Notes under the pieces: generated by a model
Told to the model about the DNA's origin: nothing
The model's database searches: none
Seen by the model: only the letters and a program-made list of their open reading frames with translations
Translations under genes and position numbers: made by a program
From: Malacoraja senta
Lineage: Eukaryota
Length of the DNA stretch: 64,000 bases
NCBI GenBank assembly: GCA_038087875.1
Contig: CM075978.1
Span: 175,150,001-175,214,000, forward strand
Reading direction: 5' to 3'
In this document: positions 1 through 58,504 of the stretch, piece by piece
How positions within the stretch are numbered: position 1 is the stretch's first letter
Layout: each line of letters opens with the position of its first letter

Positions 1-1871
1 AGGGAAGCTGACCAGGAATATAAAGAAGGACAGTAAAAGCATCTTTAGATATGTTAAGGGAAAAAGAGTAGCAAAGTCAAATGTGGGTCCCTTGAAGGCA
101 GACACGGGTGAAATTATTATGGGCAACAAGGAAATGGCAGAATAGTTGAATAGGTACTTCGGATCTGTCTTCACTAAGGAAGACACAAACAATCTCCCAG
201 ATGTACTGGAGGACAGAGGATCTAAGGGTGTAGAGGAACTGAAAGAATGTTTCATTAGACGAGAAATACTATTGGGTAGGCTAATGGGACTGAAGGATGA
301 TAAATCCCCTCGGCCTGATGGTCTGCATCCCAGGATCCTCAGGGAGGTGGCTCTAGAAATAGTGGACGCATTGGTGATCATTTTCCAATGTTCAATAGAT
401 TCAGGATCAGTTCCTGTGGATTGGAGAATAGTTAATGTTATCCCACTTTTCAAGAAAGGAGCGAGAGAGAAAACGCGGATTTACAGACAGTTAGCCTGAC
501 TTCGGTGGTAGGATATATGCTGGAGTCAATTATTAAAGAGGTAATAATGGGGCATTTGGATAGCCGTAAAAGGATTAGTCCAAGTCAACATGGATTTATG
601 AAAGGGAAATCATGCTTGACTAATCTTCGCTAAATTTGTGAGGATGTGACAAGTAAAATGGATGAAGGGGTGCCAGTGGATGTAGTGTATCTAGACTTTC
701 AGAAAGCCTTTGATGAGGTCCCGCACGGGAGACTGGTGACTAAAATTAGAGCACACGGTATTGGGGTAGGGTGTTGATAGAAAATTGGTTGGCAGACCGG
801 AAGCAAGGAGTAGGAGTGAACGGGTCCTTTTCAGAATGGCAGGCAGCGGCGAGTGGAGTGCCGCAAGGCTCGGTGTTGGGGCCGCAACTGTTTACCATAT
901 ATATTAATGATTTGGAAGAGGGAATTAGGATCAACACTAGCAAGTTTGCGGATGACACAAAGCTGGGTGACAGTGTGAACTGTGAAGAGGATGTTACGAG
1001 GTTTCAGGGTGACCTGGACAGGTTGGGTGAGTGGGCAGATGCGTGGCAGATGCAGTATAATATATATACATGTGAAGTTATCCACTTTGGCGGCAAAAAC
1101 AAGGGGGCAGATTATTATCTCAATGGGGTTAGGTTAGGTAAGGGGGAGGTACAGCGAGACCTGGGTGTCCTTGTACACGGGTCACTGAAAGTTGGCGTGC
1201 AGGTACAGCAGGCAGTGAAGAAAGCTAATGGAATGTTGGCCTTCATAACAAGAGGATTTCAGTATATTAGTAAAGAGGTTCTTCTGCAGTTGTATAGGGC
1301 TATGGTGAGACCACATCTGGAGTATTGTGTACAGATTTGGTCACCTAATTTGAGGAAGGACATCCTTGTGATTGAGGCAGTGCAGCGTAGGTTCACGAGA
1401 TTGATCCCTGGGATGGCGGGATTGTCATATGAGGAAAGATTGAAAAGTCTAGGCTTGTATTCACTGGAGTTTAGAAGGATGAGGGGTTATCTTATAGAAA
1501 TATATAAAATTATAAAAGGACTGGACAAGCTAGATGCAGGAAAAATGTTCCCAATGTTGGGCGAGTCCAGAACCAGGGGCCACAGCCTTAGAATAAAGGG
1601 GAGGTCATTTAAGACTGAGGTGAGAAAAAACCTTTCCACCCAGAGAGTTGTGAATTTATGGAATTCCCTGCCACAGAGGGCAGTGGAGGCTAAATCACAG
1701 GATGGATTTAAGAGAGAGTTAGATAGAGCTCTAGGGGCTAGTGGAGTCAATGTATATGGGGAGAAGGCAGGCACGGGTTATTGATTGTGGACGATCAGCC
1801 ATGATTGGCGGTGCTGGCTCGAATGGCCGAATGGCATCCTCCTGCACCTATGTTTCTATGTTTCTATGTTT
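1..1871 (+). mobile_element. CR1-type LINE, 3' part of ORF2 (RT), disabled, with (TATGTTTC)n tail
   Basis: ORFs 146-499 (KSPRPDGLHPRIL) and 771-1784 (GVPQGSVLGP, FADDTK, RGHSLRI) separated by stops and frameshifts; microsatellite tail at about 1849-1871. Confidence 0.95.
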
Positions 1872-8205: not shown

Positions 8206-11200
8206 GTCTTTGTATTGTATCCAGGATAAGGGGGGAGTATGAGGGCCAGGGTAGTTTACTGTTCTGGATGTCAGATGTGGGAGGTCATGGAGTCTGATAC
8301 CCCTCCAGATGTCCACATCTGTGCCAGGTGCGTCGAGATGGGGCTCCTAAGGGACCGTGTTCGGAACCTGGTGCAGCAGCTCGATGACCTCTGTCTGATC
8401 AGGGAGAGTGAGGAGGTCATCGAAAGGAGTTATAGGGTGGTGGGCACTCCAAGACCACGGGAGGCAGACAAGTGGGTCACGGTTAGGAAGGGCAAGGGGC
8501 AGAGGCAGGGACTAGTGAGTACCCCGGTGGCTGTATACCTTGAAAATAAGTACTCCTGTTTGAGTATTGTTGGGGGGGACAGCCTTCCTGGGGTAGCGAC
8601 AGCGGCCGGGCCTCCGGCACAGAGACCGGCCCTATTGCTCAGAAGGGTAGGGAAAAGAAGAGGAGGGCAATAGTAATAGGGGACTCTATAGTTAGGGCGT
8701 CGGATAGGCGATTCTGTGGTGCAGTCAGGAGACCCGGATGGTAGTTTGCCTCCCTGGCGCCAGGGTCAGGAATGTGTCTGAACGCGTCCAAGATATCCTG
8801 AAATCGGAGGGAGAGGAGCCTGAGGTCGTGGTACATATAGGTACCAATGACATAGGCAGAAAAAGAGAAGAGGTCCTGAAAGGAGAATTTAATGAGTTGG
8901 GAGGAGAGTTAAGGAGAAGGACCGCAAAGGTAACAATCTCAGGATTACTACCTGTGTCACGCGACAGTGAGATTAGGAATGGAATGAGGTCGAGGATAAA
9001 TGCGTGGCTGAGGAACTGGTGCAGCGGGCAGGGATTCAAATTTCTGGATCATTGGGACCTCTTTTGGGGAAGGTGTGACCTGTACAGAAAGGACGGGTTG
9101 CACTTGAACCCGAGGGGGACCAATATCCTGGCGGGGAGATTTGCAAAGTCTACTGGGGAGACCTTAAACTAGAACAGTTGGGGGGAGGGACTCAAATAGA
9201 GAAAGCTAGTAGACAATGTGGGAGGCAGGAGGCACAGAAGGGAAGCACTCGGATCCAAAGTGTAGGGGAGAAAGAAGAAAAATATTATAAACAGAGAAGA
9301 AGTGGTGGTGGGTTTCTTAAATGTGTATATTTTAATGCTAGGAGCATTGTCCCATGGAGCATTGTCCCACGGTTACTGGCGGTGAAGCACGGTGTAGCAG
9401 GAAGTGGAGACTGCGCGTGGACCGCTAGGGGACCGCGCATGGCCCGCGGGGTCGGTCCCACGCAGATCGCCGGAACCGTATGTAGTTGGTCCCGACACCG
9501 TGCGGTGCTCAGAAAAACTGACACTGTCCAAAAATCTCGGCTTGCCGCCCCGCCGCCGCCGCCTCTTCGCCGCGAGCACCGCCCGTACACCGCGAGCACC
9601 GCCTGTATGCCGCGAGCACTGCTTGGACGCCACGAGCCATCTCGACGTCATCGCATAGCGCGTTGCATTGCGCGATGACGTCATCACCCGACGCCGCGCT
9701 CGCCGCATGCATTTGCATGCTCGTGGGACAGGCCGTACGGTAAACATGGCCTCCGCGCGGCAACCGCTTCCAGTTAGGTTGCGCTTGCCGCATGTTCGTG
9801 GGACCGGCCGTATGGTGAACACTCTGCCCCCGCGCGGTACCTGCGCGGCCCATGCTTCCGGGGACGCCGCGTTTCAACGCCTGTTGCCGCCTGCCCGTGG
9901 GACAGCGCCTTAAAGGTGGATGAGCTTAGAGCCTGGATTGAGACCTGGAAGTATGATGTTGTGGCGATCAATGAAACATTGTTGCAGGAGGGCTGTGATT
10001 GGAAACTAAATATTCCAGGATTTCGCTGCTTCAGGGGTGATAGAATGGGAGGGGCAAGAGGTGGGGGTGTTGCATTGCTTGTCAAGGACGATATTACAGC
10101 AGTGCTTTGGCAGGATAGATTAGAGGGCTCGTCTAGGGAGGCTATTTGGGTGGAACTGAGAAATGGGAAAGGGGTAGCAACACTTATAGGGGTGTATTAT
10201 AGACCACCTAATGGGGAACGAGAATTGGAAGAGCAAATATGTAAGGATATAGCAGATATTAGTAGTAAGCACAAGGTAGTGATTGTGGGAGATTTCAATT
10301 TTCCACACATAGACTGGGAAACACATTCTGTAAAAGGGCTGGATGGTTTTGAGTTTGTAAAATGTGTGCAGGATAGTTTTTTGCAGCAATACATAGAGGT
10401 GCCTACTAGAGAAAGGGCAGTGCTGGACCTCCTGTTAGGAAATGAGACAGGGCAGGTGGCAGAGGTATGCGTTTGGGAGCACTTCGGGTCCAGTGATCAC
10501 AATACCATTAGTTTCAATATAATTATGGACAGGGTCAGAACTGGACCCAGGGTTGAGATTTTTGATTGGAGAAAGGCTAACTATGAGGAGATGCGAAAGG
10601 ATTTAAAAGGAGTGAATTGGCACATGTTGTTTTATGGGAAGGATCTAGAAAAGAAATGGAGGACATTTAAAGGTGAAATTTTAAGAGTACAGAATCTTTA
10701 TGTCCCTGTTCGGTTGAAAGGAAATAGTAAAAATTGGAAAGAGCAATGGTTTTTCAAGGGAAATTGGACACGGTTCGGAAAAAGAGAGAGATCTACAATA
10801 ATTATAGGCAGCATGGAGTAAATGAGGTGCTTGAGGAGTATAAAGAATGTAAAAAGAATATTAAGAAATAAATTAGAAAACCTAAAAGAAGATATGAGGT
10901 TGCTTTGGCAAGTAAAGTGAAAGTAAATCCAAAGGGTTTCTACAGCTATATTAATAGCAAAAGGATAACAAGGAATAAAATTGGTCCATTAGAGAGTCAG
11001 GGTGGACAGCTATCTGCAGAGCCAAAAGAGATGGGGGAGATATTGAACAATTCCTTTTCTTCGGTATTCACCAAGGAGAAGGATATTGAATTATGTGAGG
11101 TAAGGGAAACAAGCAGAGTAGCAATGGAATCTATGAGATTCAAAGAAGAGGAGGTGTGGACACTTTTGAAAAATATGAAAACGGATAAGTCTCCAGGTCC

Positions 11201-12783
11201 TGACAGGATATTCCCTCGGACATTGAGGGAAGTTAGTGTAGAAATAGCAGGGGCTATGACAGAAATATTTCAAATGTCATTAGAAACGGGAATAGTGCCA
11301 GGGGATTGGCGTACTGCGCATGTTGTTCCGTTGTTTAAAAAGGGTTCTAAGAGTAAACCTAGCAAGTATAGACCTGTTAGTTTGACGTCAGTGGTAGGCA
11401 AATTAATGGAAAGGATACTTAGAGACAATATATATAAGCATCTGGATAAGCAGGGTCTGATTAGGAACAGTCAACATGGATTTGTGCCTGGAAGGTCATG
11501 TTTAACTAATCTTCTTGAATTTTTCGAAGAGGTTACTAGGGAAATTGATGAGGGTAAAGCAGTGGATGTTGTCTATATGGACTTCAGTAAGGCCTTTGAC
11601 AAGGTTCCTCGTGGAAGGTTGGTTAAGAAGATTCAATTGTTGGGTATTAATGGTGGAGTAGCAAGATGGATTCAACAGTGGCTGAATGGGAGATGCCAGA
11701 GAGTAATGGTGGATGGCTGTTTGTCAGGTTGGAGGCCGGTGACTAGTGGGGTGCCGCAGGTGTCTGTGTTGGGTCCACTGTTGTTTGTCATGTACATCAA
11801 TGATCTGGATGATGGTGTGGAAAATTGGATTAGTAAGTATGCAGATGATACTAAGATAGGTGGTGTTGTGGAAAATGAAGTAGATTTTCAAAATCTACAG
11901 AGAGGTTTAGGCCATTTGGAAGAGTGGGCTGAAAGATGGCAGATGGAGTTTAATGCTGATAAATGTGAGGTGCTAAATCTTGGTAGGACAAATCAAAATA
12001 GGACGTACATGGTAAATCGTAGCGAATTGAGGAATGCAGTTGAACAGACGGATCTAGGAATAACTGTGCATAGTTCCCTGAAGGTGGAATCTCGTGTAGA
12101 TAGGGTGGTAAAGAAAGCTTTTGGTGTGCTGGCCTTTATAAATCAGAGCACTGAATATAGAAGTTGGGATGTAATGTTAAAATTGTACAAGGCATTGGTG
12201 AGGCCAATTCTGGAGTATGGAGTACAATTTTGGTCGCCTAATTATAGGAAGGATCTCAACAAAATAGAGAGCGTACAGAGGAGATTTACTAGTATGTTGC
12301 CTGGGTTTCAATAACTAAGTTACAGAGAAAGGTTGAACAAGTTAGGTCTTTATTCTTTGGAGCGCAGAAGGTTAAGGGAGGACTTGATAGAGGTCTTTAA
12401 AATGATGAGCGGGTTAGACAGAGTTGACGTGGATAAGCTTTTCTCATTGAGAGTAGGGATGATTCAAACAAGGGGACATGACTTGAGAATTAAGGGACCG
12501 AAGTTTAGGGGTAACATTAGGGGGAACTTCTTTACACAAAGAGTGGTAGCTGTGTGGAATGAGCTTCCAGTGGAAGTGGTGGAGGCAGGTTCGATTTTAT
12601 CCTTTAAAAATCGATTGGATGGGTGTATGGACGGGAAAGGAATGGAGGGTTATGGTCTGAGTGCAGGTAGATAGGACTAGGGGGAAGAAAGTAGAAAGAA
12701 GTGGGGAAAAAAAGTGTTCGGCACGGACTTGAAGGGCCGAGATGGCCTGTTTCCGTGCTGTAATGGTTATATGGTTATATGGT
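8206..12783 (+). mobile_element. Near full-length CR1 LINE (ORF1 zinc finger + SGNH esterase; ORF2 APE endonuclease + RT), disabled
   Basis: ORF1 pieces 8239-8673 (CSGC...CARC) and 8738-9172 (HIGTNDIG, DGLHLN); ORF2 pieces 9916-10821 (YRPP, GDFNFPHIDW, SDH), 10905-12314 (YADDTK) and 12333-12674; (ATATGGTT)n tail. Confidence 0.95.
9349..9909. mobile_element. GC-rich palindromic MITE (possibly PIF/Harbinger-like) inserted at the CR1 ORF2 start
   Basis: Splits the CR1 motif FNARSIV/KVDELRAW; imperfect TIRs tgtcccacgg...ccgtgggaca; internal gtgggac repeats and tgacgtca palindromes. Confidence 0.7.
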
Positions 12784-14117: not shown

Positions 14118-14227
14118 AGAACCATTCGAGCCACGCGGTATTGCTGCAAGACGGTCGCCAACAAGCTTCACTGCTTGACTCGCTGTCAGAGAGCAAACAT
14201 CGTTGAATTTCATCATCTTGGCTCAGA

Positions 14228-14282
14228 ATGTTTATGTTTGCCGTGCTGCTGTGTCTCTCGATCCTGCGCATGAGTTACACAG
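14228..14282 (+). CDS. Gene A exon 1: signal peptide MFMFAVLLCLSILRMSYT
   Basis: ATG, hydrophobic core, phase-1 donor AG|GTTAAT, 170-bp intron joining in frame to the V exon. Confidence 0.8.
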
Positions 14283-14452
14283 GTTAATATATTTCCCTCT
14301 ATTAAACGAAAATAACAGGGAAAAGGTCAATCCGCAAAAAGTATAAGATGTACAACTCTTACTTTTCGGTCGAGCTATTTCAGCTATTTGGATTTTTATC
14401 AATCCGTTCATTGTCATTTCACATGTTTAACGTTTGTTTTTAATTCTGACAG

Positions 14453-14776
14453 TTACTGACGGGGCCTCCTCGTTCAGGGTGCGTCTGATTCCCGATAAGG
14501 TAACGAAAGTGAAAGGTGAAAATGTATCCCTATACTGTGCTTTCCCAATCTTCGGTCAGAAAGCACTGGTGGATGTATACTGGAAGAGAGACGGTCAAGA
14601 AGAGACTTTGAATCCCATCGCAAACAGGAGGATGATATTCAACAATGTCCTGAAGGGATCTGCCGAATTACATCTGTTGGACGTGAGCTTCCGTGACTCC
14701 GGGATCTATTATTGCAGTGTGAGAGGCGGGGAAGGAAAGAGTTCCAAAAGCAATGGCACGAGGATTATTGTACACG
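14453..14776 (+). CDS. Gene A exon 2: Ig V-set domain including the G strand (NKp30/SIRP-like)
   Basis: Acceptor ttctgacag| and donor G|GTGAGT, both phase 1; VSLYC..VYW..DSGIYYC; ends SNGTRIIVH. Confidence 0.95.
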
Positions 14777-17060
14777 GTGAGTCTTACTTGATGTTTCGAA
14801 TCACAATACAAAAACAAATATGGTGTGCTACAGAGTTATAAAGTAGCAATAAACGGGCCCTTTCTCAGTCTGTACTAGAGGTTTTGCTCTAGCGATTTAA
14901 GTAATTGGTTTTTCGTGATTGTTGCACCATGAGATCTTTGGACAATCATTATTCTTTAATTTCATATCATTTAGTTATCATTTTTATGTGTAGGGTTAAT
15001 TTTCGAGGCGAGCCCTCAACTGCATCCTGCGAAAGGAGTATAGATTAAGATTGCAGATAGCAGTCAATGAAATATAAACCATCATATGTTAACGAGTATT
15101 GTATCTGCAGTCGTTTAGTCAAAAAAACTACGTTCGAGTCGATACCTGTGATATCCAGATGATGGAGCATTCTTGGGGGATCGCGAATTGAGCTCTATGT
15201 TGCAGAATATCCATGTTTGACCATTTATGTAGCTATTTCTAGTCCAACTAGTAAGTGTTAACAAAACGTGTGTTGTTAGAAGAAACATTTGGTGAATAGT
15301 GAGCCTGATATATTCTAACCGCAAACTTGTGTAAGACTATTCCACCGTGATTTTAGGAATTCATAGTTTCAAAGAAAATCAATGATAAAATACGAGTCAC
15401 AACATATCTGCGACTACAGAAATTAGTTTCTGCCGAGAACGTTATAGCGGAAGTAACAAAAGTTCATGATGAAAATTGTTCAAGAAATTCAGAGGTATAG
15501 CAAGGAAGAATAGGTGGGGTGCGTGGTGGCGTATTAGTGTCGGTGGAAGACAAAAAAACATTACATGATAAACGGGGGGAAATCTGAGAATAATGCAACG
15601 TCACAAAATATGTAAACAAAGGAGATAAATGTAGTACCAGAATTCAAATGATTAAATTGCAAATTGAGAATATTAATCAAAACGTTTTCCGTCAATTTAC
15701 GTTGAGTTTCATTGGAACCCAGCAGAGCGTCGAGTGGGAGAACAGAAGCTTCAATACGAATGACAATTGCACGTCAGTGTCATACTCGATTTCTGGGTGG
15801 AAATATGCCAGAAAGCTTCACCCAACTGAGTAAGGTCTTCCCACCGCACATTTCAATCCCACATCAACAACTACTGAATACACACAGACACGCTACCATA
15901 CCTTGTCCAGTTTAAGTGCCGTGACATGCATTGCGAACAGGACAAATACCTAAAGCACCCCATCATTTTCGAAACTTATAACTGCTCAAAAATCAATCAA
16001 CAACTCCTAAACATAGAACATGAATAGGCCCTTCGGCCCACAATTCCAGTGCCGAATATGGTGCCAAACTAAATAAATCTCCGCTCTGTGTGAGACATAT
16101 CCTTTCATTCCCTGTATTTGCCTATTTAAAAATATCTAAGATGCCCCTATCGTATCTGCCTCTGCAACTACGCATGATGTAGTTAAGCTGGAAAGGGTAT
16201 AGAGCAGATTTACGAGGATGTTGCCACCACGCCAGGGTCTCAGCTATAGGGAGAGCCGAAGCAGGCCAGGACTTTATTCTATTGCAGCCCAGGAGCGTAA
16301 GGAGTGTATCTGATCATGACCGGGATAAATCGGTAATGTGCAAAGCCTTTTACCCGGAGTAGTGGAATCAAGTCCTTGTAAACGAAACATTTCAACACAT
16401 TAAATTACAATAACCGAGGAAAAGAAGTTTGCGTTGCAATTGAGAGATCAATTATGTGCCCGCCACCAGGAAAGCGAAATTGTCAGTCCCATGCACCCTT
16501 TCTTTCTTGGAACGCTTAAATTGCTTTCCACCAGGTGTTTATTTAATTTATTTTTCACGATCTGATTAGCTCTGCTTCCAGCACATTTCCGATCACTACT
16601 TGTGAAACATTCCCGGAAATTCTCTGGTGAGAGCACTTGCATAGATCAGTTTGGGATGGAGATCAAAGATTTACCATCCGATGTGGACATAATGCTTTTG
16701 TTACGTGGACGGGAGCAAAATGGTGACGCTCCTTTGCCTTTATAGATGGTGTCCTATTTGGTGTTAAGTAATGGCTGTTGCTAAACATTTCATTCTATTA
16801 AATCACCCCCCCCCCTCCTCGATCAGCCCCATTTTAATCAAATGCATGCATATTTTATCCCTAAATCCTTTCCAGTGGCCTTCCTTCCACAGACTCGTTT
16901 ACAGTTCCCATGCTTTTCCTTGCAGCCCTTCTCAAATATAGCCACAATATTAGTCATCCACCAGTCTTCATAAAGATCTTTACATGCTAATCCTCTGTTG
17001 ATACACACTCTTATTTTGATGTTTTGGTTTCATTGATTCTCGACGTCTCTAGATTAATTC

Positions 17061-19551
17061 CATTCAAGGGTGAAATTTTAAGAGTACAGAATCTTTATGT
17101 CCCTGTTCGGTTGAAAGGAAATAGTAAAAAATGGAAAGAGCCATGGTTTTCAAGGGAAATTGGACACTTGGTTCGGAAAAAGAGAGAGATCTACAATAAT
17201 TATAGGCAGCATGGAGTAAATGAGGTGCTTGAGGAGTATAAAGAATGTAAAAAGAATATTAAGAAAGAAATTAGAAAAGCTAAAAGAAGATATGAGGTTG
17301 CTTTGGCAAGTAAGGTGAAAGTAAATCCAAAGGGTTTCTACAGCTATATTAATTAGTAAAAGGATAACAAGGAATAAAATCGGTCCATTTGAGAGTCAGA
17401 GTGGACAGCTATCTGCAGAGCCAAAAGAGATGGGGGAGATATTGAACAATTTCTTTTCTTCGGTATTCACGAAGGAGAAGGATATGGAATTATGTGAGGT
17501 AAGGGAAACGAGCAGAGTAGCAATGGAAAATTGTGAGATTCGGGACTTCCGGTGGCGCTATGGAGGCTTGAGTCCAGCGCCAACTAGCNNNNNNNNNNNN
17601 NNNNNNNNNNNNNNNNNNNNNNNNNNNNNNNNNNNNNNNNNNNNNNNNNNNNNNNNNNNNNNNNNNNNNNNNNNNNNNNNNNNNNNNNNNNNNNNNNNNN
17701 NNNNNNNNNNNNNNNNNNNNNNNNNNNNNNNNNNNNNNNNNNNNNNNNNNNNNNNNNNNNNNNNNNNNNNNNNNNNNNNNNNNNNNNNTACTGGAAAACA
17801 CTTCCTATCTCAATGGTTGGCAAAATTAATGCTATAAAAATGATTTTTTTTACCGCAAATATTATACCTTTTTCAGACAATTCCGATATATCTGACAAAA
17901 AAACTTTTAAAAAAAAACTGGACTCTATTGTTAATGATTTTATCTGGGATTATAAGAATCATAGGATAAACAAAAGACCCTTGTGTAAATCAAAAATAAA
18001 TGGAGGCTTGGTTTTACCCAACTTTTTGTTTTATTTCTGGGCTGTTAATATTAAAAATATGAATTTCTGGTTGGAAGAAATAGATCATCAACCAGACTGG
18101 TTAAAAATGGAAAAGGAAGATTGTTTACCTTTTGATATCGGTTCGATATTATTTGCTACGTCTAAATTAAACAAAAAAAATTATAGGGAAAACCCTATAA
18201 TATTTAGTGCTATACGAATTTGGAAACAATTAAAAAAGACATTAAAATTAGATAATTTATCACTTTTTCTTCCAATTGTGAATAACCCTTTGTTTAAGCC
18301 TTCATGGTTGGACGGGGGTTTTACACAATGGAAGAATTATGGAATTAAAAATATGGGACAACTTTATAAGGAAGGCACCTTTCTGACATTTCAGGAGTTG
18401 CAACAGACTTATGGACTTCGAGGAAATGATTATTTCAGATATCTTCAACTTAGAGATTATGTAAAATCGAACTCTCAAAATTTTCGAATTAGAAATTCAG
18501 AAATTCTTGATGAATGTTGGAACAAACATCCTAATACAGAAAAATTAATATCTTATATATATAATATCTTATTAGACAGTGACATTCCTTCGACGGAATT
18601 ACACAGACAAACATGGGAAAAAGAATTAAATCAAGTAATAACGAAAGATACTTGGGAAGAAAGTTTGCAACACATACATCAGTGCTCACTAAACGCCAGA
18701 CATTCTCTAATACAATTTAAAGTAATACATAGGTTACATTATTCAAAAACAAAACTACATAAAATTTTTCAACATATCTCACCTATATGTGATAAATGTC
18801 AGCATTTAGAAGCTACATTATCTCATATGTTTGCAAACTGTATAAAAATTAAAAAATTCTGGGTAAATATTTTCAGTATAATATCTAAAGTAACCGGCAC
18901 ACAATTGGACCCAGATCCAAAATTAATAATACTCGGATTATTAGAATTAAATCAAACATTTAGAACAACACAAAGAAACTTTATTGATTATAGTTTAATA
19001 ACAGGAAAAAAATTAATTCTAAAATTTTGGAAAGGCCCTATGGCCCCCACAATCAAAATGTGGATTATAGAAATGACGGAGACCTTAAACGTGGAAAGAA
19101 TCAGATTTTCCCTGTTGGACAAACAGGAATTATTCGTAGGAACATGGTCTCCTTTTATTGATTACTTAAAGGGTCAGAATAGTTCAGCACAGGAACCTGA
19201 CTAGCACTCGGGCTAAAGAATGGATGAAATGCTATACTCTGAAATGTACGAATATATCTCGAATGAAGTTTTTTATTTTAATAAATTTTTCCATTCTTCT
19301 TTAACTATTTTTCTCCTTTTTTTTTTTTTTTTTTCTTTGTTTTTTTTTATTTTTTTTTTAATTCTTCTTCTCTTTCTTTTCTTTCTTTACTTCATCTATC
19401 TCTTTAGTTCTATCTAGTTTAAAAAATAAAAAAATAAAAAGGCAAAAGGTATTGGAGACAATGTAATAATAATTGACAATATTATCAATTTAAAAATGTT
19501 AGACTGTAATGATGTAAATAGGTTGTGTACTTATCTCCAATAATAAAAAAT

Positions 19552-19584
<33 letters not shown>

Positions 19585-21277
19585 AAACTGTGAGATTCAA
19601 AGAAGAGGAGGTGCGGACACTTTTGAAAAATATGAAAACGGATAAGTCTCCAGGTCCTGACAGGATATTCCCTAGGACATTGAGGGAAGTTAGTGTAGAA
19701 ATAGCAGGGGCTATGACAGAAATATTTCAAATGTCATTAGAAACGGGAATAGTGCCGGAGGATTGGCGTACTGCGCATGTTGTTCCGTTGTTTAAAAAGG
19801 GTTCGAAGAGTAAACCTAGCAATTATAGACCTGTTAGTTTGACGTCAGTGGTGGGCAAATTAATGGAAAGGATACTTAAAGATAATATATATAAGCATCT
19901 GGATAAGCAGGGTCTGATTAGGAACAGTCAACATGGATTTGTGCCTGGAAGGTCATGCTTGACTAATCTTCTTGAATTTTTCGAAGAGGTTACTAGGGAA
20001 ATTGATGAGGGTAAAGCAGTGGATGTTGTCTATATGGACTTCAGTAAGGCCTTTGACAAGGTTCCTCATGGAAGGTTGGTTAAGAAGATTCAATTGTTGG
20101 GTATTAATGGTGGAGTAGCAAGATGGATTCAACAGTGGCTGAATGGGAGATGCCAGAGAGTAATGGTGGATGGCTGTTTGTCAGGTTGGAGGCCAGTGAC
20201 TAGTGGGGTGCCTCAGGGGTCTGTGTTGGGTCCACTGTTGTTTGTCATGTACATCAATGATCTGGATGAAGGTGTGGAAAATTGGATTAGTAAGTATGCA
20301 GATGATACTAAGATAGGTGGTGTTGTGGATAATGAAGTAGATTTTCAAAGTCTACAGAGAGATTTAGGCCATTTGGAAGAGTGGGCTGAAAGATGGCAGA
20401 TGGAGTTTAATGCTGACAAATGTGAGGTGCTACATCTCGGCAGGACAAATCAAAATAGGACGTACACGGTAAATGGTAGCGAATTGAGGAATGCAGTTGA
20501 ACAGAGGGATCTAGGAATAACTGTGCATAGTTCCCTGAAGGTGGAATCTCATGTAGATAGGGTGGTAAAGAAAGCTTTTGGTGTGCTGGCCTTTATAAAT
20601 CAGAGCATTGAATATAGAAGTTGGGATGTAATGTTAAAATTGTACAAGGCATTGGTGAGGCCAATTCTGGAGTATGGAGTACAATTTTGGTCGCCTAATT
20701 ATAGGAAGGATGTCAACAAAATAGAGAGAGTACAGAGGAGATTTACTAGAATGTTGCCTGGGTTTCAGCAACTAAGTTACAGAGAAAGGTTGAACAAGTT
20801 AGGTCTTTATTCTTTGGAGCGCAGAAGGTTAAGAGGGGACTTGATAGAGGTCTTTAAAATTATGAGCGGGTTAGACAGAGTGGACGTGGATAAGCTTTTC
20901 CCATTGAGAGTAGGGAAGATTCAAACAAGGGGACGTGACTTGAGAATTAAGGGACAGAAGTTTAGGGGGAACATTAGGGGGAACTTCTTTACTCAGAGAG
21001 CGGTAGCTGTGTGGAATGAGCTTCCAGTGGAAGTGGTGGAGGCAGGTTCGATGTTATCCTTTAAAAATAGATTGGATGGGTATATGGACGGGAAAGGAAT
21101 GGAGGGTTATGGTCTGAGTGCAGGTAGATGGGACTAGGGGGAAGTATTTTATTTTTAATTAAAAAAAATATATATATATATATATATATATATTAAATGT
21201 TCGGCACGGACTTGAAGGGCCGAGATGGCCTGTTTCCGTGCTGTTATGGTTATATGGTTATATGGTTATATGGTTAT
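17061..21277 (+). mobile_element. 5'-truncated CR1 LINE (same subfamily as 8206-12783) split by an L1 insertion; RT open 19590-21137
   Basis: Near-identical to 10660-12783 by eye; GVPQGSVLGP, YADDTK; (ATATGGTT)n tail. Confidence 0.95.
17542..19583 (+). mobile_element. L1/Tx1-clade LINE with both ends present, interior hidden by an assembly gap
   Basis: 5' end gggacttccggtggcgct; 200 N (17589-17788); open ORF2 C-terminus 17813-19204 with CDKC..H...C motif; aataa signal and poly(A); TSD gaaa(at/c)tgtgagattc on both sides. Confidence 0.9.
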
Positions 21278-22595: not shown

Positions 22596-22877
22596 TGTCA
22601 CCGACGCCTTTGAAGATTAAACAAATGGACACTCCTTCCCTGGCCCTAAACTGTACAACTGCTCCGTTTTTCCCGGAGGACTGTGAACTTACCTGGTATA
22701 AAGATGACCATGAAATCACTTCTGGAATAAGTACCACTAAAATACGGAACGATGAGGGCTTATACCTTGCTTCCAGCTTCCTGCGTGTAGTGGATAGCCG
22801 ATCGGTTTATAGTTGCCACCTATCTCACGTCACCCTCCTGGTTCGGACCATTGAAACTCACAGATTTCCTGGAATCG
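22596..22877 (+). CDS. Gene A exon 3: Ig C1-set domain
   Basis: Acceptor ttgtttacag| and donor G|GTATGA, phase 1/1; LNC...FFP....LTWYK...YSCHLSH is the C1 pattern (F[YF]P, W, YxCxxxH). Confidence 0.93.
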
Positions 22878-24027: not shown

Positions 24028-26096
24028 ATTCTAAGGGGAGTATGAGGCAACCGTGGCAGACAAGAGAAGTTAGGGATATAATAACATTAAAAGAAAAGAT
24101 GTATAACACAGCAAAGAGTAGTCGGAAGCCAGAGGATTGGGAAACTTTCATAGGACAACAGAAGGAAACAAAACGGGCAATACGGGCTGAAATGGTGAAG
24201 TACGGGGGGAAGCTGGCCAGGAATATAAAGAAGGACAGTAACAGCTTCTTTAGATATGTTAAGGAAAAAAGAGTAGCAAAATCAGATGTAGGTCCCTTGA
24301 AGGCAGACACGGGCGAAATTATTATGGGGAAGAAGGAAATGGCAGAGGAGTTGAACAGGTACTTTGAATCTGTCTTCACTAACGAAGACACCAACAATCT
24401 CCCGGAAGTACTGGAGGATAGAGGATCAAAGGGGGTAGAGGAACTGAAAGAAATGATCATTAGGTGAGAAATAGTATTGGGTAGGCTAATGGGATTGAAG
24501 GATGATAAATCCCCTGGGCCCGATGATCTGCATCCCAGGGTCCTCAGGAAGGTGGCTCTAGAAATAGTGGTCGCACTGGTGATCATTTTCCAATGTTCAA
24601 TAGATTCAGGATCAGTTCCTGTGGAATGGAGGATAGCTAATGTTATCCCAATTTTCAAGAAAGGAGCGAGAGAGAAAACGTGGAATTACAGACCAGTTAG
24701 CCTGACTTCGGTGGTGGGAAAGATGCTGGAGTCAATCAATAAAGCGGTAATAATGGGGCATTTGGATAGCAGTAAAAGGATTAGTCCAAGTCAGCATGGA
24801 TTTATGAAAGGAAAATCATGCTTGACTAATCTTCTGGAATTTTTTGAGGATGTGACAAGCAGAATGGATGAAGGGGAGCCAGTGGATGTAGTGTGTCTAG
24901 ACTTTCAGTACGCCTTTGATAAGGTCCCGCACGGGAGACTGGTGACTAAAATTAGAGCACATGATATTGGGGGTAGGGTGTTGACGTGGATAGAACATTG
25001 GTTGGTAGACAGGAAGCAAAGTGTAGGAGTGAACGGGTCCTTTTCAGAATGGCAGGCAGTGGCGAGTGGAGTGCCGCAATGCTCGGTGTTGGGGCCGCAA
25101 CTGTTTACGATATATTAATGATTTGGAAAAGGGAATTAGGACCAACACCAGCAAGTTTGCAGATGACACAAAGCTGGGTGGCAGTGTGAACTGTGAAGAG
25201 GATGTTAGGACGTTGCAGGATGACCTGGACAGGTTGGGTGTGTGGGCAGATGCGTGACAGATGCAGTATAATATAGATAAATGTGAGGTTACCCACTTTG
25301 TGGCAAAAACAAGGGGACAGATTATTATCTCAATGGGTTAGGTTAGGTAAGGGGGGGTACAGCGAGACCTGGGTGTCCTTGTACACTGGTCACTGAAAGG
25401 TGGCGTGCAGGTACAGCAGGCAGTGAAGAAAACGAATGGAATGTTGTCCTTCATAACAAGAGGATTTCAGTATAGGAGTAGAGAGATTCTTCTGCAGTTG
25501 TATAGGGCTCTGGTAAGACCACATCTGGAGTATTGTGTACAGTTTTCGTCTCCTAATTTGAGGAATGACATCCTTCTGATTGAGGCAGTGCAGCGTAGGT
25601 TCACGAGATTGATCCCTGGGATGGCGGGACTGTCATATGAGGAAAGATTGAAAAGACTAGGCTTCTATTCACTGGGGTTTAGAAGGATGAGGGGAGATCT
25701 TATAAAAACATATAAAATTATAAAAAAGACTGGACAAGCTAGATGCAGGCAAAATATTCCCAATGTTGGGCGAGTCCAGAACCAGGGGCCACAGTCTTAA
25801 AAAAAAGGGGAGGCCATTTAAGATTTAGGAGAGAAAAAACGTTTTCAGCCAGAGAGTTGTGAATTTGTGGAATTCCCTGCAACAGAGAGCAGTGGAGGCC
25901 AAATCACTGGATGGATTTAAGAGAGAGTTAGATAGAGCTCTAGGGGCTGGTGGAATCAAGGGGTATGGGGAGAAGGCAGGCACGGGTTATTGATTGGGGA
26001 CAATCAGCCATGATCACAATGAATGGCGGAGTTGGCTCGAAGGGCCGAATGGCCTCCTACACCTATTTTCTATGTTTCTATGTTTCTATGTTTCTA
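24028..26096 (+). mobile_element. 5'-truncated, disabled CR1 LINE (same subfamily as 1-1871)
   Basis: ORF fragments 24042-24467, 24477-25118 and 25405-25800; (TATGTTTC)n tail. Confidence 0.95.
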
Positions 26097-30553: not shown

Positions 30554-30665
30554 GAACAAGCGTTAAACTCATCTGCTTTCGGGCGGGTGGATTTGCCATA
30601 TGCGTTTTAATTATTCTAGCGCTGGTATTTTTTTGTCAGGCGGTACGAATTAGACAGTACTGAAG
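30554..30665 (+). CDS. Gene A exon 4: transmembrane exon with Arg (TSVKLICFRAGGFAICVLIILALVFF); contains an apparent +1 T frameshift
   Basis: Strong acceptor tttcatttccctttag| and donor AG|GTAAGA. As written it stops at 30663; with one T fewer in 30628-30634 it reads VRRYELDSTE through to a phase-1 donor. Confidence 0.88.
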
Positions 30666-32679: not shown

Positions 32680-32775
32680 AATCCAACGTACGCAGATTTG
32701 AACTTCAGCAGACAGAAGAAAACTGAGAAAAACAGACGGGACGAAAAACAAACTGGCTATGCTCAGGTCAGATAA
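32680..32775 (+). CDS. Gene A exon 6: terminal cytoplasmic exon NPTYADLNFSRQKKTEKNRRDEKQTGYAQVR*
   Basis: Acceptor gttccctcag|, phase 0; two tyrosine motifs (PTYADL, TGYAQV); AATAAA at 32881-32886. Confidence 0.8.
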   Translation, partial: NPTYADLNFSRQKKTEKNRRDEKQTGYAQVR

Positions 32776-37112: not shown

Positions 37113-37331
37113 AAACTGCTGCATGAGTCAGTGCCACCTCACAGATGTCCAATTACAATGGATCTCATTTACATACATGACATCACAATGGGACAGGGTG
37201 TGGGAGATTGGAACCTTCACGTGGTCCCACTAAAATCAAACTGCTGCATGAGTCAGTGCCATGTCACAGATGTCTAATCACAATGGATCTCATTTACATA
37301 TGCCATCACAATGGGACAGGGGTGGGAGATC
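37113..37331. repeat. Two diverged copies of a ~95-bp unit (period ~123 bp)
   Basis: aaactgctgcatgagtcagtgcca...caatgggacaggg(t)gtgggagat occurs twice. Confidence 0.85.
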
Positions 37332-37990
37332 TCTCCCCCTCCCTCCCTCCCTTACACCCCCGTGCCTTCCCCCACTCCCCCATCTCCTCTCTCCCCTCCT
37401 CCCTCCCCCACTCTCTCCCCCCCTCTCTCCCCCCCTCCTCTCTCTCCCCCTCCTCCTCTCTCTCTCCCCCTCCACTCACCCCCTCTCCTCTCTCTCCCAC
37501 TCCACTCCTCTCTCCAGCTCTCCCCTCCCGCTCTTCCTCCCCCTCTCCCCTCTTCTCCCCCACCCTCTCCTCTCACCTCCCCCTCTTCCCCTCTCCTCTC
37601 CCGCCCCTTCCCCCACAACTCTCTCCCCCCTCACCCATCCTTCCCCTCCCCCCTCTACCACCCCCTTCCCCCTACCCCTTTATCCCCTTCACCCTCCCCG
37701 CTCTCCTCCCATCCTCATCCCCCTCCATCTCCCTTCCCCCTCCCCTTTCCTCCCCCTCCCCACTCTCTCCCCATCTCCCCCTCCCCACTCTCTCCCCATC
37801 TCCCCCTCCCCCTCCCCACTCTCTCCCCATCTCCCTCTCCCCTCCTCCCCCACCCCCCCCCCTCACCCACCCATCCTCTCCTCCTCCCCTCCACCCCCTC
37901 TCCCTCTCTCTCTTGCCCTTCTGTCTCTGCCCCTCTCTCTCTCTGTCTCTCCCCATTCTCTCTCTGCCCTCACTCTCTACCCCCCCTCTC
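37332..37990. repeat. ~650-bp C/T-rich low-complexity tract
   Basis: Almost all pyrimidines on +; the Pro/Ser- and Gly/Glu/Arg-rich ORFs here are compositional artefacts. Confidence 0.95.
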
Positions 37991-44045: not shown

Positions 44046-44119
44046 TTAATTAATTAATTCATTCATTCGTCTTGCCTTCGTTTTCTGATCGGCACTTTCT
44101 TTCGATGTTCTGCACGTCC
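44046..44119 (-). CDS. Gene B exon 5 (predicted): short cytoplasmic tail GTCRTSKESADQKTKARRMNELIN*
   Basis: Pyrimidine-rich acceptor ttttctctctaaattacctccctatag|, phase 1; minus-strand AATAAA at 43927-43922; no tyrosine. Confidence 0.65.
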
Positions 44120-44781: not shown

Positions 44782-44874
44782 CTTTATATATCACAATGAA
44801 AGTAACGATTATGATAGGTATCAATCCTGCTCTTATGTAACCAAAAAGCGTATTATGAAGTGGATTAACAAAAA
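44782..44874 (-). CDS. Gene B exon 4: stalk + transmembrane with Arg (FVNPLHNTLFGYIRAGLIPIIIVTFIVIYK)
   Basis: Acceptor ttttttattgtttacag| and donor AAG|GTAAG; 93 bp, phase 1/1; same R-A-G motif as gene A. Confidence 0.9.
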
Positions 44875-52900: not shown

Positions 52901-53212
52901 CGTAAACTACCAGCTTTGTACCAGTCCCGTTTAAAACGTTGGTACGTGTCAAGCTGCAAAAATAGAGCCCGGCGTCCTTCACTGTCACGTCCTCCAGCCG
53001 TAAGACAGCGCTTCCCCCTCTCAGGAAATAAAACTGGATTCGTTTATCTGCACTTTCATCCAGGAATCTATTATCCCCATCTCTCCACCAATGCACTTTG
53101 TACGGCCTGTTGTCTGAGAAGATTGGATAAATGCAGTAAAGCACTGCCGAGTCACCCCGCATCAAAACAGCTTCTGGAACTTGTGTTACGGTCAACGGGC
53201 CATCGTCACCAG
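52901..53212 (-). CDS. Gene B exon 2: Ig V-set domain with J-like GTGTKLVV G strand
   Basis: Acceptor tttcgtttcccgacag| and donor G|GTGAGT, phase 1/1; VLYC..VHWWRDG..DAGLYFC..NGTGTKLVVY. Confidence 0.95.
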
Positions 53213-53401
53213 CTGTCGGGAAACGAAAAATGAAACGATAAGGCTTAGGATTAAACTAATGACCAAATTAATTGAAAATTGTACGTAACGAGAACAAAAA
53301 TAAAGATAAACTTATAAGTTAATAATTAAGTTAATTTATAATATTTAAGTTATAAATATTTATAACTAAATTTATAATAATTAAGTTAATTTAAAATATA
53401 C

Positions 53402-53453
53402 CTGCGCAGCTGACGTGAAGAACAATCAATTGCAGTAAGACACGTGTCATCAT
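53402..53453 (-). CDS. Gene B exon 1: signal peptide MMTRVLLQLIVLHVSCA
   Basis: ATG ATG, hydrophobic core, phase-1 donor CAG|GTATAT, 189-bp intron in frame with the V exon. Confidence 0.88.
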
Positions 53454-57050: not shown

Positions 57051-58504
57051 GCAATGGGAGTAAGCAATTTAATAAAAATCAGCAAGTACTTCTGCTTCTG
57101 CCAATCCGTTTTGGAAAATGCATGCTAGTGAGTGCATAATACTCGGGAGAGTGACACGTTTGGCTGCCGTATTTTTCAATTAACTATTCCATGGAAACGC
57201 ATTGCCTCGACATATTGCAGACATATTAAATGATTAAATACCGCGTTTCCTTTTCTTGGATTGCTGTGAGCTTCCGAATCTGTCATTTCCCCTCAGGTCA
57301 GTTAGTCTGATCAAGTTCATTGATTGATGAAACACATTAAACAGTTGGACAAATTCTTCCCTTTAACCACATGCAAATGTTTCAATTGAAACTTGATGAA
57401 AACGAGTCATTCCTCAATATGCGTGTGTGCTTTTTTCCAATGACATTCACGCCGCCGACAAGAATGAATAAGAAAAAAATTGATAACGCGATTGGATCTC
57501 CCCATTCATTCATCCCCAATCTCACAACGGGGCTCTCAAATCCTCTTCAGAAGGCATATGGCTTAACTAAACGAAGTAGATATCCTGTGGATAACAGATA
57601 TCATCTGGGTTTTGGAGATAGTGGGTAAGTTAGTCGTACTGTGGTGTCATTTCATAGAGGGGGAAATGACAGGGGAACTGGTACATCATAGGGGGTCACC
57701 CACTACGATAGTTGCACATGTCTTTTCCGTATTCACAACGGGCACTACAATTTTACAATGAAATGTGTTATGCTGTACTTTGGAAATAAACTTCCGATAC
57801 ATCTTCCGAATACATATCAGCATGCAGACCATCTATGGTATGATTTACAATTTGAAATATTTATGATATTCATATGGCTGCATGAATGATTCAAATCTGA
57901 ACAACGACATTACTTGCGGGGTAATCTCACAGTCGCGAAATCGCATTCGTTAAACGTTTAAACATACTTACCCAACACAACTAAAGTCGTCCCGGTACCG
58001 TTGCCAACTAAAGTGCCCCGGCGGGTAATGGTACAATAATACACTCCTGCATCCTGTAGACTCATATTGACTATTTTCAGTAAGCGACTGGATTAAGGAA
58101 TAATGCCCGAAACCTTTCTCCCGTCGGGGCAATGGATGAAAAAAAACGATTGTCATCCTGTTTCCACCAATGTATGCTTACGCGGGGCCCTTCCCGAAAG
58201 AAGGGATGAGAGGAGTGAAAATAAGCATGTTGGCCCTTCGGGACTTTCACTACTTAATGAAGTTGAGTTACTTTTTCTGAAGTTTCACCAGATCGTGAAG
58301 GGAAAAAAAACACGACCGATTTAGTAATATTTCACCCCAGAAGGCAAAACGCAGGAGCAGGGCTAATTGCAAATGAAAATAAAGACACGGATTAACGAAA
58401 TCTTGAATAGATTTAGGTTTGTATAAAAGATGTAGGAGTGTATAAAAGATTTATGGACTGTCAAGTATCTGTGAAAATTATCCCCCAAAAAGGGAAACAG
58501 CGAA

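What the first reader, a model, noticed from the sequence alone, without database searches (positions are those of the whole stretch)
14228..14776. Antigen-receptor-like architecture without rearrangement: leader, short intron, pre-joined VJ exon, C1
Seen: both genes have a split leader with a short intron (170 and 189 bp). One exon holds strands A-G with a J-like end (GTGTKLVV in gene B, SNGTRIIV in gene A), followed by a true C1 exon. No heptamer/nonamer RSS lies near either V exon. Established: C1-set domains are largely limited to Ig, TCR, MHC, B2M, tapasin, SIRP and B7H6, and non-rearranging VJ-C1 genes have been proposed as resembling the pre-RAG antigen-receptor ancestor. Inference: these are candidates for that lineage.
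Basis: partly seen in the sequence, partly recalled or inferred. Interest (0 to 1): 0.75.

Follow-up and report, generated by a model that had tools for sequence, protein, structure and literature searches.

The report
Skate non-rearranging V-C1 immune receptor genes
The window holds two apparently intact skate genes for surface receptors shaped like one antibody chain (a ready-joined V domain plus a true C1 domain) that never rearrange; they belong to a large shark, ray and chimaera family of paired activating and inhibitory receptors, so nothing singles them out as relics of the antigen-receptor ancestor.

Summary
Both genes have a split leader (introns of exactly 170 and 189 bp), one phase-1 exon encoding a whole V domain with a J-like G strand, and a separate exon that scores as C1-set by Pfam, PDB sequence search and fold search. 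No RSS exists anywhere in the 64 kb.

About 90 database proteins share this V-C1-TM design. All come from cartilaginous fish, lie in one chromosomal cluster per species, and carry contradictory automatic names (SIRP-alpha-like, tapasin-related-like, lambda-like, NCR3LG1-like). Gene B is 93% identical to a Leucoraja erinacea prediction, so the window is from a skate.

Activating-type members (Arg in the membrane span, short tail) and inhibitory-type members (tyrosine-motif tails) interleave on the V tree. Both window genes are of the activating type. NKp30 is the nearest named V domain (28-32% identity). The C1 domain is most like MHC class II and Ig constant domains.

I could not show expression, MHC linkage, or a closer tie to Ig/TCR than NKp30, SIRP or UrIg have. 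The scan already reported this family on neighbouring DNA of the same genome (s1-140140, s1-140093, s1-140183, s1-140261). No readable paper describes it, and several key papers were not held.

The parts
14228..14282 (+). Gene A leader exon (ATG, 55 nt, ends in phase 1)
14283..14452 (+). Gene A leader intron, 170 bp, GT..AG
14453..14776 (+). Gene A V(J) exon. It encodes a whole V domain whose G strand reads SNGTRIIV (first Gly of GxG replaced by Ser).
   Evidence: Pfam V-set E 1.2e-10; 123 bits to the family V HMM; sister to a Mobula/Hemitrygon clade on the V tree
22596..22877 (+). Gene A C1 exon. It lies 7.8 kb downstream of the V exon; the intron holds LINE fragments and an N gap at 17589-17788.
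   Evidence: Pfam C1-set E 1.6e-11; 107 bits to the family C1 HMM
30554..30665 (+). Gene A stalk/transmembrane exon with Arg (..CFRAGGF..). A TGA stop at 30661-30663 lies just before a GT donor, giving a 256-aa product.
53402..53453 (-). Gene B leader exon
53213..53401 (-). Gene B leader intron, 189 bp
52901..53212 (-). Gene B V(J) exon, G strand NGTGTKLVV
   Evidence: Pfam V-set E 2.3e-8; model pLDDT 90; NKp30 is the top fold hit; 93% aa identity to L. erinacea P0156
50485..50787 (-). Gene B C1 exon with the Ig/MHC signature YTCQVSH
   Evidence: Pfam C1-set E 3.6e-11; PDB phmmer hits MHC-I alpha3, IgM, SIRP, DM-beta and UrIg2; model pLDDT 92 with MHC-II beta2/alpha2 as top hits
44782..44874 (-). 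Gene B stalk/transmembrane exon with Arg (..GYIRAGLIP..)
   Evidence: the closest L. erinacea locus has Gly at this position
44046..44119 (-). Gene B last coding exon, giving a short tail that ends in TAA and a 277-aa product
   Evidence: the L. erinacea locus has a GT donor where the window has GC
57961..58253 (-). Broken third V exon of the same family. The 3' half is intact and has a donor; the 5' half is frameshifted and holds a stop.

Best explanation
Genes A and B are germline-joined, non-rearranging members of a multigene family restricted to cartilaginous fish. Family members are type I membrane receptors built as leader, V(J) domain, one C1-set domain, short stalk, transmembrane span and tail.

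The family works as paired receptors. Inhibitory members have an uncharged membrane span and long tails with ITIM/ITSM-type tyrosines. Activating members have an Arg in the outer third of the membrane span and a tail of 5-35 residues. Both window genes read as the activating type.

By analogy with NKp30 (inferred, not shown), the Arg would dock an Asp-bearing ITAM adaptor of the CD3-zeta/FcR-gamma type, and the V domain would bind a germline-defined ligand. The ligand is unknown.

Compared with its closest available relative in little skate, gene B looks like an activating derivative of an inhibitory-type gene. It has Gly changed to Arg in the membrane span, a tail-exon donor changed from GT to GC with read-through to a stop, and no ITIM tail exon in the collinear DNA.

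Shown: gene structure, domain types, absence of RSS, family membership, and the family's taxonomic range within the databases searched. Inferred: expression, adaptor use, signalling direction and ligand binding.
For: - Spliced ORFs of 256 aa (A) and 277 aa (B), with canonical GT-AG, phase-1 exon borders.
- V-set plus C1-set domains.
- No RSS in the window.
- The HMMER search of 1.84 billion representatives found many 220-410 aa proteins with one N-terminal V match. The 30 looked up are all from sharks, rays, skates or Callorhinchus. The word-based searches returned only cartilaginous-fish family members, followed by a drop from 194 to 41 bits.
- Gene B is 93% identical in both V and C1 to L. 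erinacea P0156. Gene A's best hits are 54-57%.
- On the V tree both genes sit inside well-supported subfamilies, and the activating label needs 12 changes on the tree. Near-identical ectodomains carry opposite tails, for example P0077 and P0083.
- The short leader intron (about 160-190 bp) is also present in Callorhinchus genes.
- Fold models: NKp30 is the top V hit in Swiss-Prot and PDB at 28-32% identity. The V model superposes on antibody V domains at Z 14-15, rmsd 1.6-1.9 A. The top C1 hits are all C1-set domains: MHC-II in Swiss-Prot, and MHC-II, beta2-microglobulin and HLA-DM in the PDB.
- The little skate locus is collinear with the gene B region. Leader, V and C1 exons are 95-97% identical in DNA, against about 83-84% for the blocks spanning the introns and 5' flank, and 71-76% downstream of C1. 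The TM and tail differences are as stated above.
- dN/dS is 0.45 over V plus C1, from few changes.
Against: - No transcript evidence. The only runs holding the sequence are DNA-like contigs that run through the leader intron.
- Gene A has a degenerate J motif, a long terminal branch, and a stop 2 nt before a good donor, so it may be decaying or may use another reading.
- Adaptor pairing and ligand binding rest on analogy only.
- The L. erinacea locus may be a paralogue, not the orthologue. The step in non-coding identity after the C1 exon would fit gene conversion of the 5' part.
- Taxonomic restriction rests on databases with limited sensitivity for short Ig domains.
Confidence: 0.75

Rival explanations
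1. One reading: these genes are surviving relatives of the non-rearranging VJ-C1 gene that the RAG transposon invaded, and so are closer to the Ig/TCR ancestor than other VJ genes are.
For: VJ-type V exon, split leader with a short intron, and a true C1 exon, with no RSS. The V model superposes best on antibody and shark VNAR V domains by geometry. The family is old, being present in both chimaeras and elasmobranchs.
Against: - The same features hold for SIRP, NKp30 plus a C1, and UrIg/UrIg2.
- The best sequence-aware V hits are NKp30, at 28-32% identity against 25% or less for most Ig/TCR V domains. UrIg2 V is not among the top 50.
- No linkage to the MHC or the antigen-receptor complex was shown. 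That linkage is the core argument for UrIg/UrIg2.
- The family shows rapid birth-and-death and switching between activating and inhibitory forms, which is typical of innate paired receptors.
Confidence: 0.1
2. They are NKp30 (NCR3)-lineage genes that keep, or gained, a C1 domain. On this reading the family is a sister of the MHC-linked shark NCR3 genes.
For: NKp30 is the top fold hit for the gene B V domain in two libraries, and full-length phmmer matches to NKp30 exist for both genes. Both genes have an Arg-Ala-Gly in the membrane span and a short tail; that human NKp30 has the same motif is from my memory, not tested. V-only isoforms or paralogues inside the family show that the C1 is easily dropped.
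Against: - NCR3 proper is a V-only cluster beside AIF1 in the shark MHC class III region. NCBI names those genes 'NCR3-like', a name no family member carries.
- Identity to NKp30 is only about 30%. For gene A, PD-L1 V scores higher than NKp30.
- Earlier unverified notes place NKp30-like V-only clusters on other pieces of this genome.
Confidence: 0.3
3. They are the cartilaginous-fish counterpart of the SIRP family (V plus C1 domains, with an ITIM-tailed alpha form and a charged-TM beta form).
For: 'SIRP-alpha-like' is the commonest automatic name. C1 phmmer hits SIRP-alpha and SIRP-gamma at about 1e-10. The nearest Atlas cluster by features is a V-C1-C1 set whose structural neighbours include SHPS1/SIRP fragments. 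One skate member, P0077, has two C1 domains. The family has multi-tyrosine inhibitory tails and charged-TM partners.
Against: Each window gene has a single C1 exon. SIRP V domains do not appear among the best 60 sequence hits or the top 30-50 fold hits for the V domain. The charged residue is Arg near the outer face of the membrane, as in NKp30, whereas SIRP-beta has a Lys (from my own knowledge, not tested).
Confidence: 0.2
4. They are B7/butyrophilin-type ligands (V plus a C1-like domain), not receptors.
For: Some members are auto-named NCR3LG1-like or CD276 homolog. For gene A's V domain, PD-L1 is the best single-domain PDB sequence hit, at E 1.7e-6. Gene A's C1 has weak secondary Pfam hits to CD80-like C2-set (9e-5) and BTN Ig-C (7e-4).
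Against: C1-set scores about 6-7 orders of magnitude better than the B7-type C models. No B7 or BTN structure is in the top 30-50 fold hits for gene B's C1 or V. The G strand is a conserved J-type GxGTxLxV. Family members carry ITIM/ITSM tails or a TM Arg, which are receptor hallmarks.
Confidence: 0.05
5. One or both genes are unexpressed or decaying copies in a birth-and-death cluster.
For: No RNA support was found. A broken V exon of the same family lies 4.5 kb upstream of gene B. Gene A has a degenerate GxG motif, a stop just before a donor, and an intron full of LINE insertions.
Against: All exons of both genes are open with intact splice sites and canonical Cys/Trp residues. Gene B's exons are far better conserved than its introns when compared with the little skate locus, and dN/dS is below 1.
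Confidence: 0.15

Closest known systems
NKp30 / NCR3 (mammals to sharks)
   Same: Germline-joined VJ-type V domain. NKp30 is the nearest named V by Foldseek in Swiss-Prot and PDB, at 28-32% identity. Both have an Arg in the membrane span with a short tail, and both are non-rearranging.
   Different: NKp30 has no C domain, whereas these genes have a true C1 exon. Shark NCR3 genes sit in MHC class III beside AIF1, while this cluster has no shown MHC linkage. The family also includes many ITIM-tailed members.
SIRP family (SIRP-alpha/beta/gamma)
   Same: VJ-like V followed by C1-set domains. Both families have paired inhibitory (multi-tyrosine tail) and activating (charged TM, short tail) members. 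The C1 domain hits SIRP d2/d3 at about 1e-10. SIRP-like is the commonest automatic name.
   Different: SIRPs have two C1 domains and these genes have one. SIRP V domains are not among the best V matches. The charged residue is Arg, not Lys. No CD47 link is known.
UrIg and UrIg2 (elasmobranch non-rearranging Ig-like genes; PMC12227049)
   Same: Split leader, a single VJ exon, C1-type constant domains, no rearrangement, and a cartilaginous-fish distribution. UrIg2 C domains are among the C1 sequence hits.
   Different: UrIg has V plus 3 C1 and is secreted by liver. UrIg2 has V plus 9-11 C1. Both are essentially single genes with defined MHC or antigen-receptor-complex linkage. Here there is one C1, a signalling-type TM and tail, a large multigene cluster, and a V domain closer to NKp30.
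Teleost NITRs (novel immune-type receptors)
   Same: Non-rearranging V domains with a J-like motif, large clustered multigene families, and activating and inhibitory forms (and my own knowledge).
   Different: NITRs are confined to bony fish and have V or V plus I-type domains, not C1. No sequence relationship was tested here.
B7 / butyrophilin family, including B7H6
   Same: V plus a C1-like ectodomain with phase-1 exons. Some family members are auto-named after B7H6 or CD276, and gene A's V hits PD-L1.
   Different: B7 V domains lack the J-type strand. The C1 domain here scores far better as classical C1-set than as B7-type C. TM Arg and ITIM tails point to a receptor, not a ligand.

Membership tests
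Rearranging antigen receptors (Ig/TCR) | V and J segments separated and flanked by RSS (heptamer, 12/23 spacer, nonamer) | tested here: not met
   0 RSS-like sites in 64 kb on both strands, against 0.68 expected. V and J-like parts lie in one exon.
Rearranging antigen receptors (Ig/TCR) | V domain with a J-type G strand (GxGTxLxV) followed by a C1-set domain | tested here: met
   Gene B reads GTGTKLVV; gene A has the degenerate SNGTRIIV. C1-set by Pfam, PDB and fold search.
NKp30 / NCR3 | Ectodomain of a single VJ-type V domain with no C domain | tested here: not met
   Each gene has a C1 exon that splices in frame between the V and TM exons.
NKp30 / NCR3 | V domain groups with NKp30 V domains | tested here: inconclusive
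   NKp30 is the top Foldseek hit at 28-32% identity, and phmmer gives E 2e-4 to 7e-4. E-values barely separate it from CD79b, Ig-lambda and VNAR. PD-L1 scores higher for gene A. No tree with named references could be built.
NKp30 / NCR3 | Arg in the membrane span with a short cytoplasmic tail | tested here: met
   Gene A reads CFRAGGF with a tail of about 10 residues; gene B reads YIRAGLIP with a tail of about 26 residues.
NKp30 / NCR3 | Location in MHC class III next to AIF1/LST1 | not testable with these tools
   Shark NCR3 genes lie there. The window holds no marker gene, and large assemblies gave no record name or DNA.
SIRP | V domain followed by two C1-set domains | tested here: not met
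   A family C1 HMM scan of all six frames finds one C1 exon per gene. One skate relative, P0077, has two.
SIRP | Paired ITIM-tailed and charged-TM members with similar ectodomains | tested here: met
   Family table and V tree. Met at the family level; both window genes are the charged-TM type.
SIRP | Binding of CD47 | not testable with these tools
   Needs a binding assay.
UrIg / UrIg2 | VJ exon followed by three or more C1-type domains | tested here: not met
   One C1 exon per gene. Definition taken.
UrIg / UrIg2 | Linkage to MHC class III (UrIg) or to the IgH/TCR-alpha-delta complex (UrIg2) | not testable with these tools
   No synteny markers in the window. The Callorhinchus cluster is on MU249845.1 at 15.22-15.74 Mb, but that scaffold could not be matched to the RefSeq names used in the MHC paper.
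B7 / butyrophilin | IgC domain of the CD80-like or BTN type, and a V domain without a J-type strand | tested here: not met
   C1-set 1.6e-11 and 3.6e-11, against C2-set_2 at 9e-5 (A only) and C2-set_3 at 7e-4 and 0.095. The J-type strand is conserved. No B7 or BTN in the top fold hits.
Unnamed cartilaginous-fish V-C1-TM receptor family (public gene predictions) | V and C1 domains that score strongly against family profiles and nest within the family tree | tested here: met
   V 120 and 118 bits in the spliced proteins; V 123 and 121 bits, C1 107 and 130 bits on the exon ORFs. Both genes sit inside supported clades at 100/96 and 100/97. Gene B is 93% identical to L. erinacea P0156.

The most novel reading that the evidence does not exclude
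This V-C1-TM family, present in chimaeras, sharks and rays, preserves the primordial form of the NKp30 lineage. On this reading it is a signalling, germline-joined VJ-C1 receptor from which V-only NKp30 arose by loss of the C1 exon. The V-only isoforms and paralogues inside the family show that step. The family would be a third surviving witness, beside UrIg and UrIg2, of the kind of VJ-C1 gene that existed when the RAG transposon split a V exon.
Probability: 0.12. Interest if true: 0.7.

Novelty: new variant of a known kind. Interest (0 to 1): 0.4.

Why it matters
Non-rearranging VJ-C1 genes are central to the question of which gene the RAG transposon invaded. Only UrIg and UrIg2 are discussed as such in sharks in the papers I could read.

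If trees and synteny tie this family to NKp30 or to the MHC paralogous regions, it would add a large, signalling-competent third family to that discussion. It would also give a concrete route between V-C1 and V-only receptors.

Independently of origins, the family looks like the cartilaginous-fish equivalent of the SIRP, KIR or NITR type of paired receptors. The comparison of gene B with the little skate locus is a compact example of how an activating receptor can arise from an inhibitory one.

For this particular window the result is modest: two more members of a family that public gene sets and earlier notes of this scan already contain.

Tried and rejected
1. RNA support. Two run searches found only runs whose contigs cross the leader intron and come in several 90-99% variants, meaning DNA with alleles or paralogues. 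There were no splice joints, so expression is untested.

2. Named outgroups for V and C1 trees. The third word-based protein search, relaxed to E 0.1, added only one unrelated eel protein.

3. Profile searches of the PDB. The top 60 rows are swamped by multi-domain proteins (titin, pIgR, whole antibodies) and do not rank single domains.

4. MHC linkage.
- Large assemblies returned no DNA or record name.
- The Callorhinchus cluster was located on MU249845.1 but could not be matched to the NW_ names of the MHC and paralogue scaffolds.
- Comparing contig lengths with chromosome numbers gave no consistent assignment.
- The family's automatic names do not occur in the held part of the MHC paper's gene lists, which proves little because the file was cut when stored.

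5. Literature. Kinlein 2021 (shark NCR3 family), Flajnik 2012, Ohta and Flajnik 2015 and the 2023 UrIg paper were requested and are not held. Fu 2019 (PRARP) did not come up in the search and was not requested by id; Ohta 2019 was not looked up. A published description of this family cannot be excluded. Full-text searches for VJ-C1, NCR3 plus C1, or SIRP plus elasmobranch found none.

6. Rejected: that the CACGGTG at 14773 is an RSS heptamer. It is the exon end plus the GT donor, and no nonamer follows.

Full report
**What is in the sequence**

The window is repeat-rich vertebrate DNA. It holds many LINE reverse-transcriptase ORFs and two N gaps.

Gene A (+ strand):
- The leader exon is 14228-14282, a 170-bp GT..AG intron follows, and the V exon is 14453-14776. 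The V exon is in phase 1 at both ends and encodes a whole V domain ending ...KSNGTRIIVH.
- A second Ig exon at 22596-22877 follows, across a 7.8-kb intron filled with LINE fragments and a gap.
- A stalk/transmembrane exon at 30554-30665 reads ..CFRAGGFAICVLIILALVFF.. and ends in a TGA two bases before a good GT donor.
- Spliced, this gives a 256-aa protein.

Gene B (- strand):
- The leader is 53453-53402, the intron is 189 bp, and the V exon is 53212-52901, ending NGTGTKLVVY.
- The Ig exon is 50787-50485, the TM exon is 44874-44782 (..GYIRAGLIPIIIVTFIVIY..), and the last coding exon is 44119-44046.
- Spliced, this gives 277 aa.
- All borders are GT-AG and phase 1.

An HMM scan of all six frames finds no further C1 exon. 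It does find one more V exon, at 57961-58253 (-), which is broken by a frameshift and a stop.

**Domain types and absence of rearrangement signals**

- Pfam gives V-set for both first domains (E 1.2e-10 and 2.3e-8) and C1-set for both second domains (1.6e-11 and 3.6e-11). The B7-type C models are far behind (C2-set_2 at 9e-5 for A only).
- phmmer of gene B's C1 against PDB sequences hits MHC class I alpha3, IgM constant domains, SIRP-alpha and SIRP-gamma, HLA-DM beta and UrIg2. The family profile hits Ig heavy-chain constant regions and UrIg2.
- AlphaFold models of gene B's two domains are confident, with pLDDT 90 and 92.
- The C1 model's best 30 Swiss-Prot matches are all MHC class II membrane-proximal domains. 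Its best 50 PDB matches are those plus beta2-microglobulin and HLA-DM.
- For the V model, NKp30 is the best match in both libraries (28-32% identity). CD79b, Ig-lambda V, shark VNAR, CD8-beta and TCR-alpha follow closely.
- By geometry alone the V model superposes best on antibody V domains (Z 14-15, rmsd 1.6-1.9 A). The DSSP string shows the G strand split at the GxG position.
- An RSS scan of the whole window found nothing, against 0.68 sites expected by chance. The only heptamer-like string near a V exon is the splice donor of gene A.

The one caveat is that gene A's first Gly of the J-type GxG is Ser.

**What the genes belong to**

A HMMER search with gene B's V exon against 1.84 billion representatives returned giant multi-Ig proteins and, beside them, dozens of 220-410 aa proteins with one N-terminal V match. 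Their sequences show the same plan:
- a V domain ending NGTG[T/S]xLxV;
- a C1 domain with ..C.TA.FYP......TWYKNG.. and YTCxVSH;
- a TM span and a tail.

All 30 clusters looked up, and all hits of two further searches, come from sharks, rays, skates or the chimaera Callorhinchus. They carry contradictory automatic names: SIRP-alpha-like, tapasin-related-like, Ig lambda-1-like, NCR3 ligand 1-like, CD276 homolog, and even MHC class I or II chain-like. Scores drop from 194 to 41 bits after the last family member.

In each species the members share one chromosome-sized contig. In Callorhinchus they span at least 15.22-15.74 Mb of MU249845.1.

Gene B is 93% identical in both domains to L. erinacea P0156, so the window comes from a skate. 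Gene A is 54-57% identical to Mobula and Hemitrygon members. Genes A and B are only 33% (V) and 37% (C1) identical to each other.

The short leader intron is also present in Callorhinchus genes, at about 160-190 bp.

**How it most likely works**

A table of 89 family proteins shows three tail types:
- uncharged TM with tails of 70-150 residues bearing ITIM/ITSM-like tyrosines;
- TM with an Arg near its outer end and tails of 5-35 residues;
- a tyrosine-free basic tail.

On the V-domain tree, activating-type and inhibitory-type members interleave. The activating label needs 12 changes. Near-identical ectodomains carry opposite tails, for example the Amblyraja protein P0077 and P0083. This is the pattern of paired receptor families.

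Some predictions lack the C1 domain: P0103 is a C1-less isoform of the gene that also gives P0106, and P0138 is a V-only gene inside the Callorhinchus cluster. One skate member has two C1 domains.

Both window genes are of the Arg-bearing, short-tailed type. By analogy with NKp30 I infer pairing with an Asp-bearing ITAM adaptor. This is inference, not a result.

**Comparison with the little skate locus**

The little skate locus (L004) is collinear with the gene B region.
- Leader, V and C1 exons are 95-97% identical in DNA. The blocks spanning the introns and 5' flank are about 83-84% identical, and DNA downstream of C1 is 71-76%.
- In L004 the TM exon has Gly where gene B has Arg.
- In L004 the next exon ends in a GT donor where gene B has GC and reads on to a stop.
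- In L004 an ITIM/ITSM exon follows. Homology to the window stops before that point.

Gene B therefore looks like an activating derivative of an inhibitory-type gene, or of its paralogue. dN/dS is 0.7 for V and 0.34 for C1, from few changes.

**What could not be shown**

- Expression is unverified. The only runs with this DNA are genomic-looking contigs, present in several variants.
- MHC linkage is unresolved. Shark NCR3 genes proper lie beside AIF1 in MHC class III. Nothing links the V-C1 cluster to that region or to the paralogous regions listed in the MHC paper.
- A tree with named references could not be built.
- For gene A, PD-L1 is a slightly better single-domain sequence hit than NKp30. 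The V affiliation is therefore a lead and is not settled.

**Comparison with what is known**

UrIg (V plus 3 C1, secreted, MHC-linked) and UrIg2 (V plus 9-11 C1, linked to IgH/TCR-alpha-delta) are the published non-rearranging antigen-receptor-like genes of elasmobranchs. The present genes fail the domain-number feature of UrIg, SIRP and NKp30, so I do not file them under any of these.

They work most like the SIRP or NKp30 type of germline receptor. No readable paper describes the family, but several key papers were not held.

Earlier notes of this scan report the same family from about 285 kb before to about 4.9 Mb beyond this window, and reached similar conclusions. I treated those notes as leads and re-derived the points above.

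**Verdict**

The evolutionary inference is not excluded, but these genes support it no better than NKp30 or SIRP genes would. This is an undescribed-looking but already predicted variant of a known kind of receptor, and the window adds two activating-type members and one dead V exon.

Noticed in passing
window 57961-58253 (-): A third V exon of the same family, broken. The 3' half (..[36 protein letters not shown] plus a GT donor) is intact. The 5' half is frameshifted and holds a stop. It resembles the Amblyraja P0077/P0083 subfamily.
   Followed up: partly
window 43258-44874 (-) against L004 18310-20136: Gene B differs from the closest little skate locus in exactly the features that set signalling direction. 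The TM has Arg (AGA) where the skate locus has Gly (GGA). The tail-exon donor is GC where the skate locus has GT. The ITIM/ITSM exon (IVYSDF..STIYTQV) is present in little skate, but homology to the window ends at 43258, before it. This fits an inhibitory-to-activating conversion or a paired paralogue.
   Followed up: partly
window 30628-30665 (+): Gene A's TM exon ends in TGA two bases before a strong GT donor, just downstream of a run of seven T. A possible tail exon with NPTYADL and TGYAQV motifs lies at about 32680-32775. Whether gene A is short-tailed or ITIM-tailed depends on this reading, which other first-stage notes raise separately.
   Followed up: partly
P0077 (Amblyraja radiata), P0103/P0106 (Heterodontus francisci), P0138 (Callorhinchus, L003): Domain number is plastic in the family. 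One skate prediction has two near-identical C1 domains. Some isoforms or genes skip the C1 and are NKp30-shaped V-TM receptors.
   Followed up: partly
P0156 (L. erinacea) and window 50440-50485 (-): The NCBI model of the little skate relative reads through the C1 exon's donor into the intron (..YTFYSRGKNNDTF..). This hints at an intron-retaining, possibly secreted, isoform. The same read-through frame is open for 40 codons in the window.
   Followed up: no
window 14150-14850, runs X1, X2, X7, X15: Public runs hold this stretch as many short contigs at 90-99% identity, with numerous variant positions in the V exon. This is what multiple alleles or close paralogues would give. Several other organisms share 16-28% of the 31-mers.
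   Followed up: no
window 750-1781, 10872-12311, 19518-21134, 24468-25115, 62493-63989: Long LINE-type reverse-transcriptase and endonuclease ORFs fill the introns and intergenic DNA. The copies at 11166-12783 and 19623-21270 are about 90% identical to elements in the little skate locus.
   Followed up: no
window 37181-38073, next to the N gap at 36774-36978: A stretch of about 0.9 kb is open in all three + frames and encodes Pro/Ser/Leu-rich low-complexity repeats, with strong C over G skew. It is probably a simple-repeat array and not a gene.
   Followed up: no
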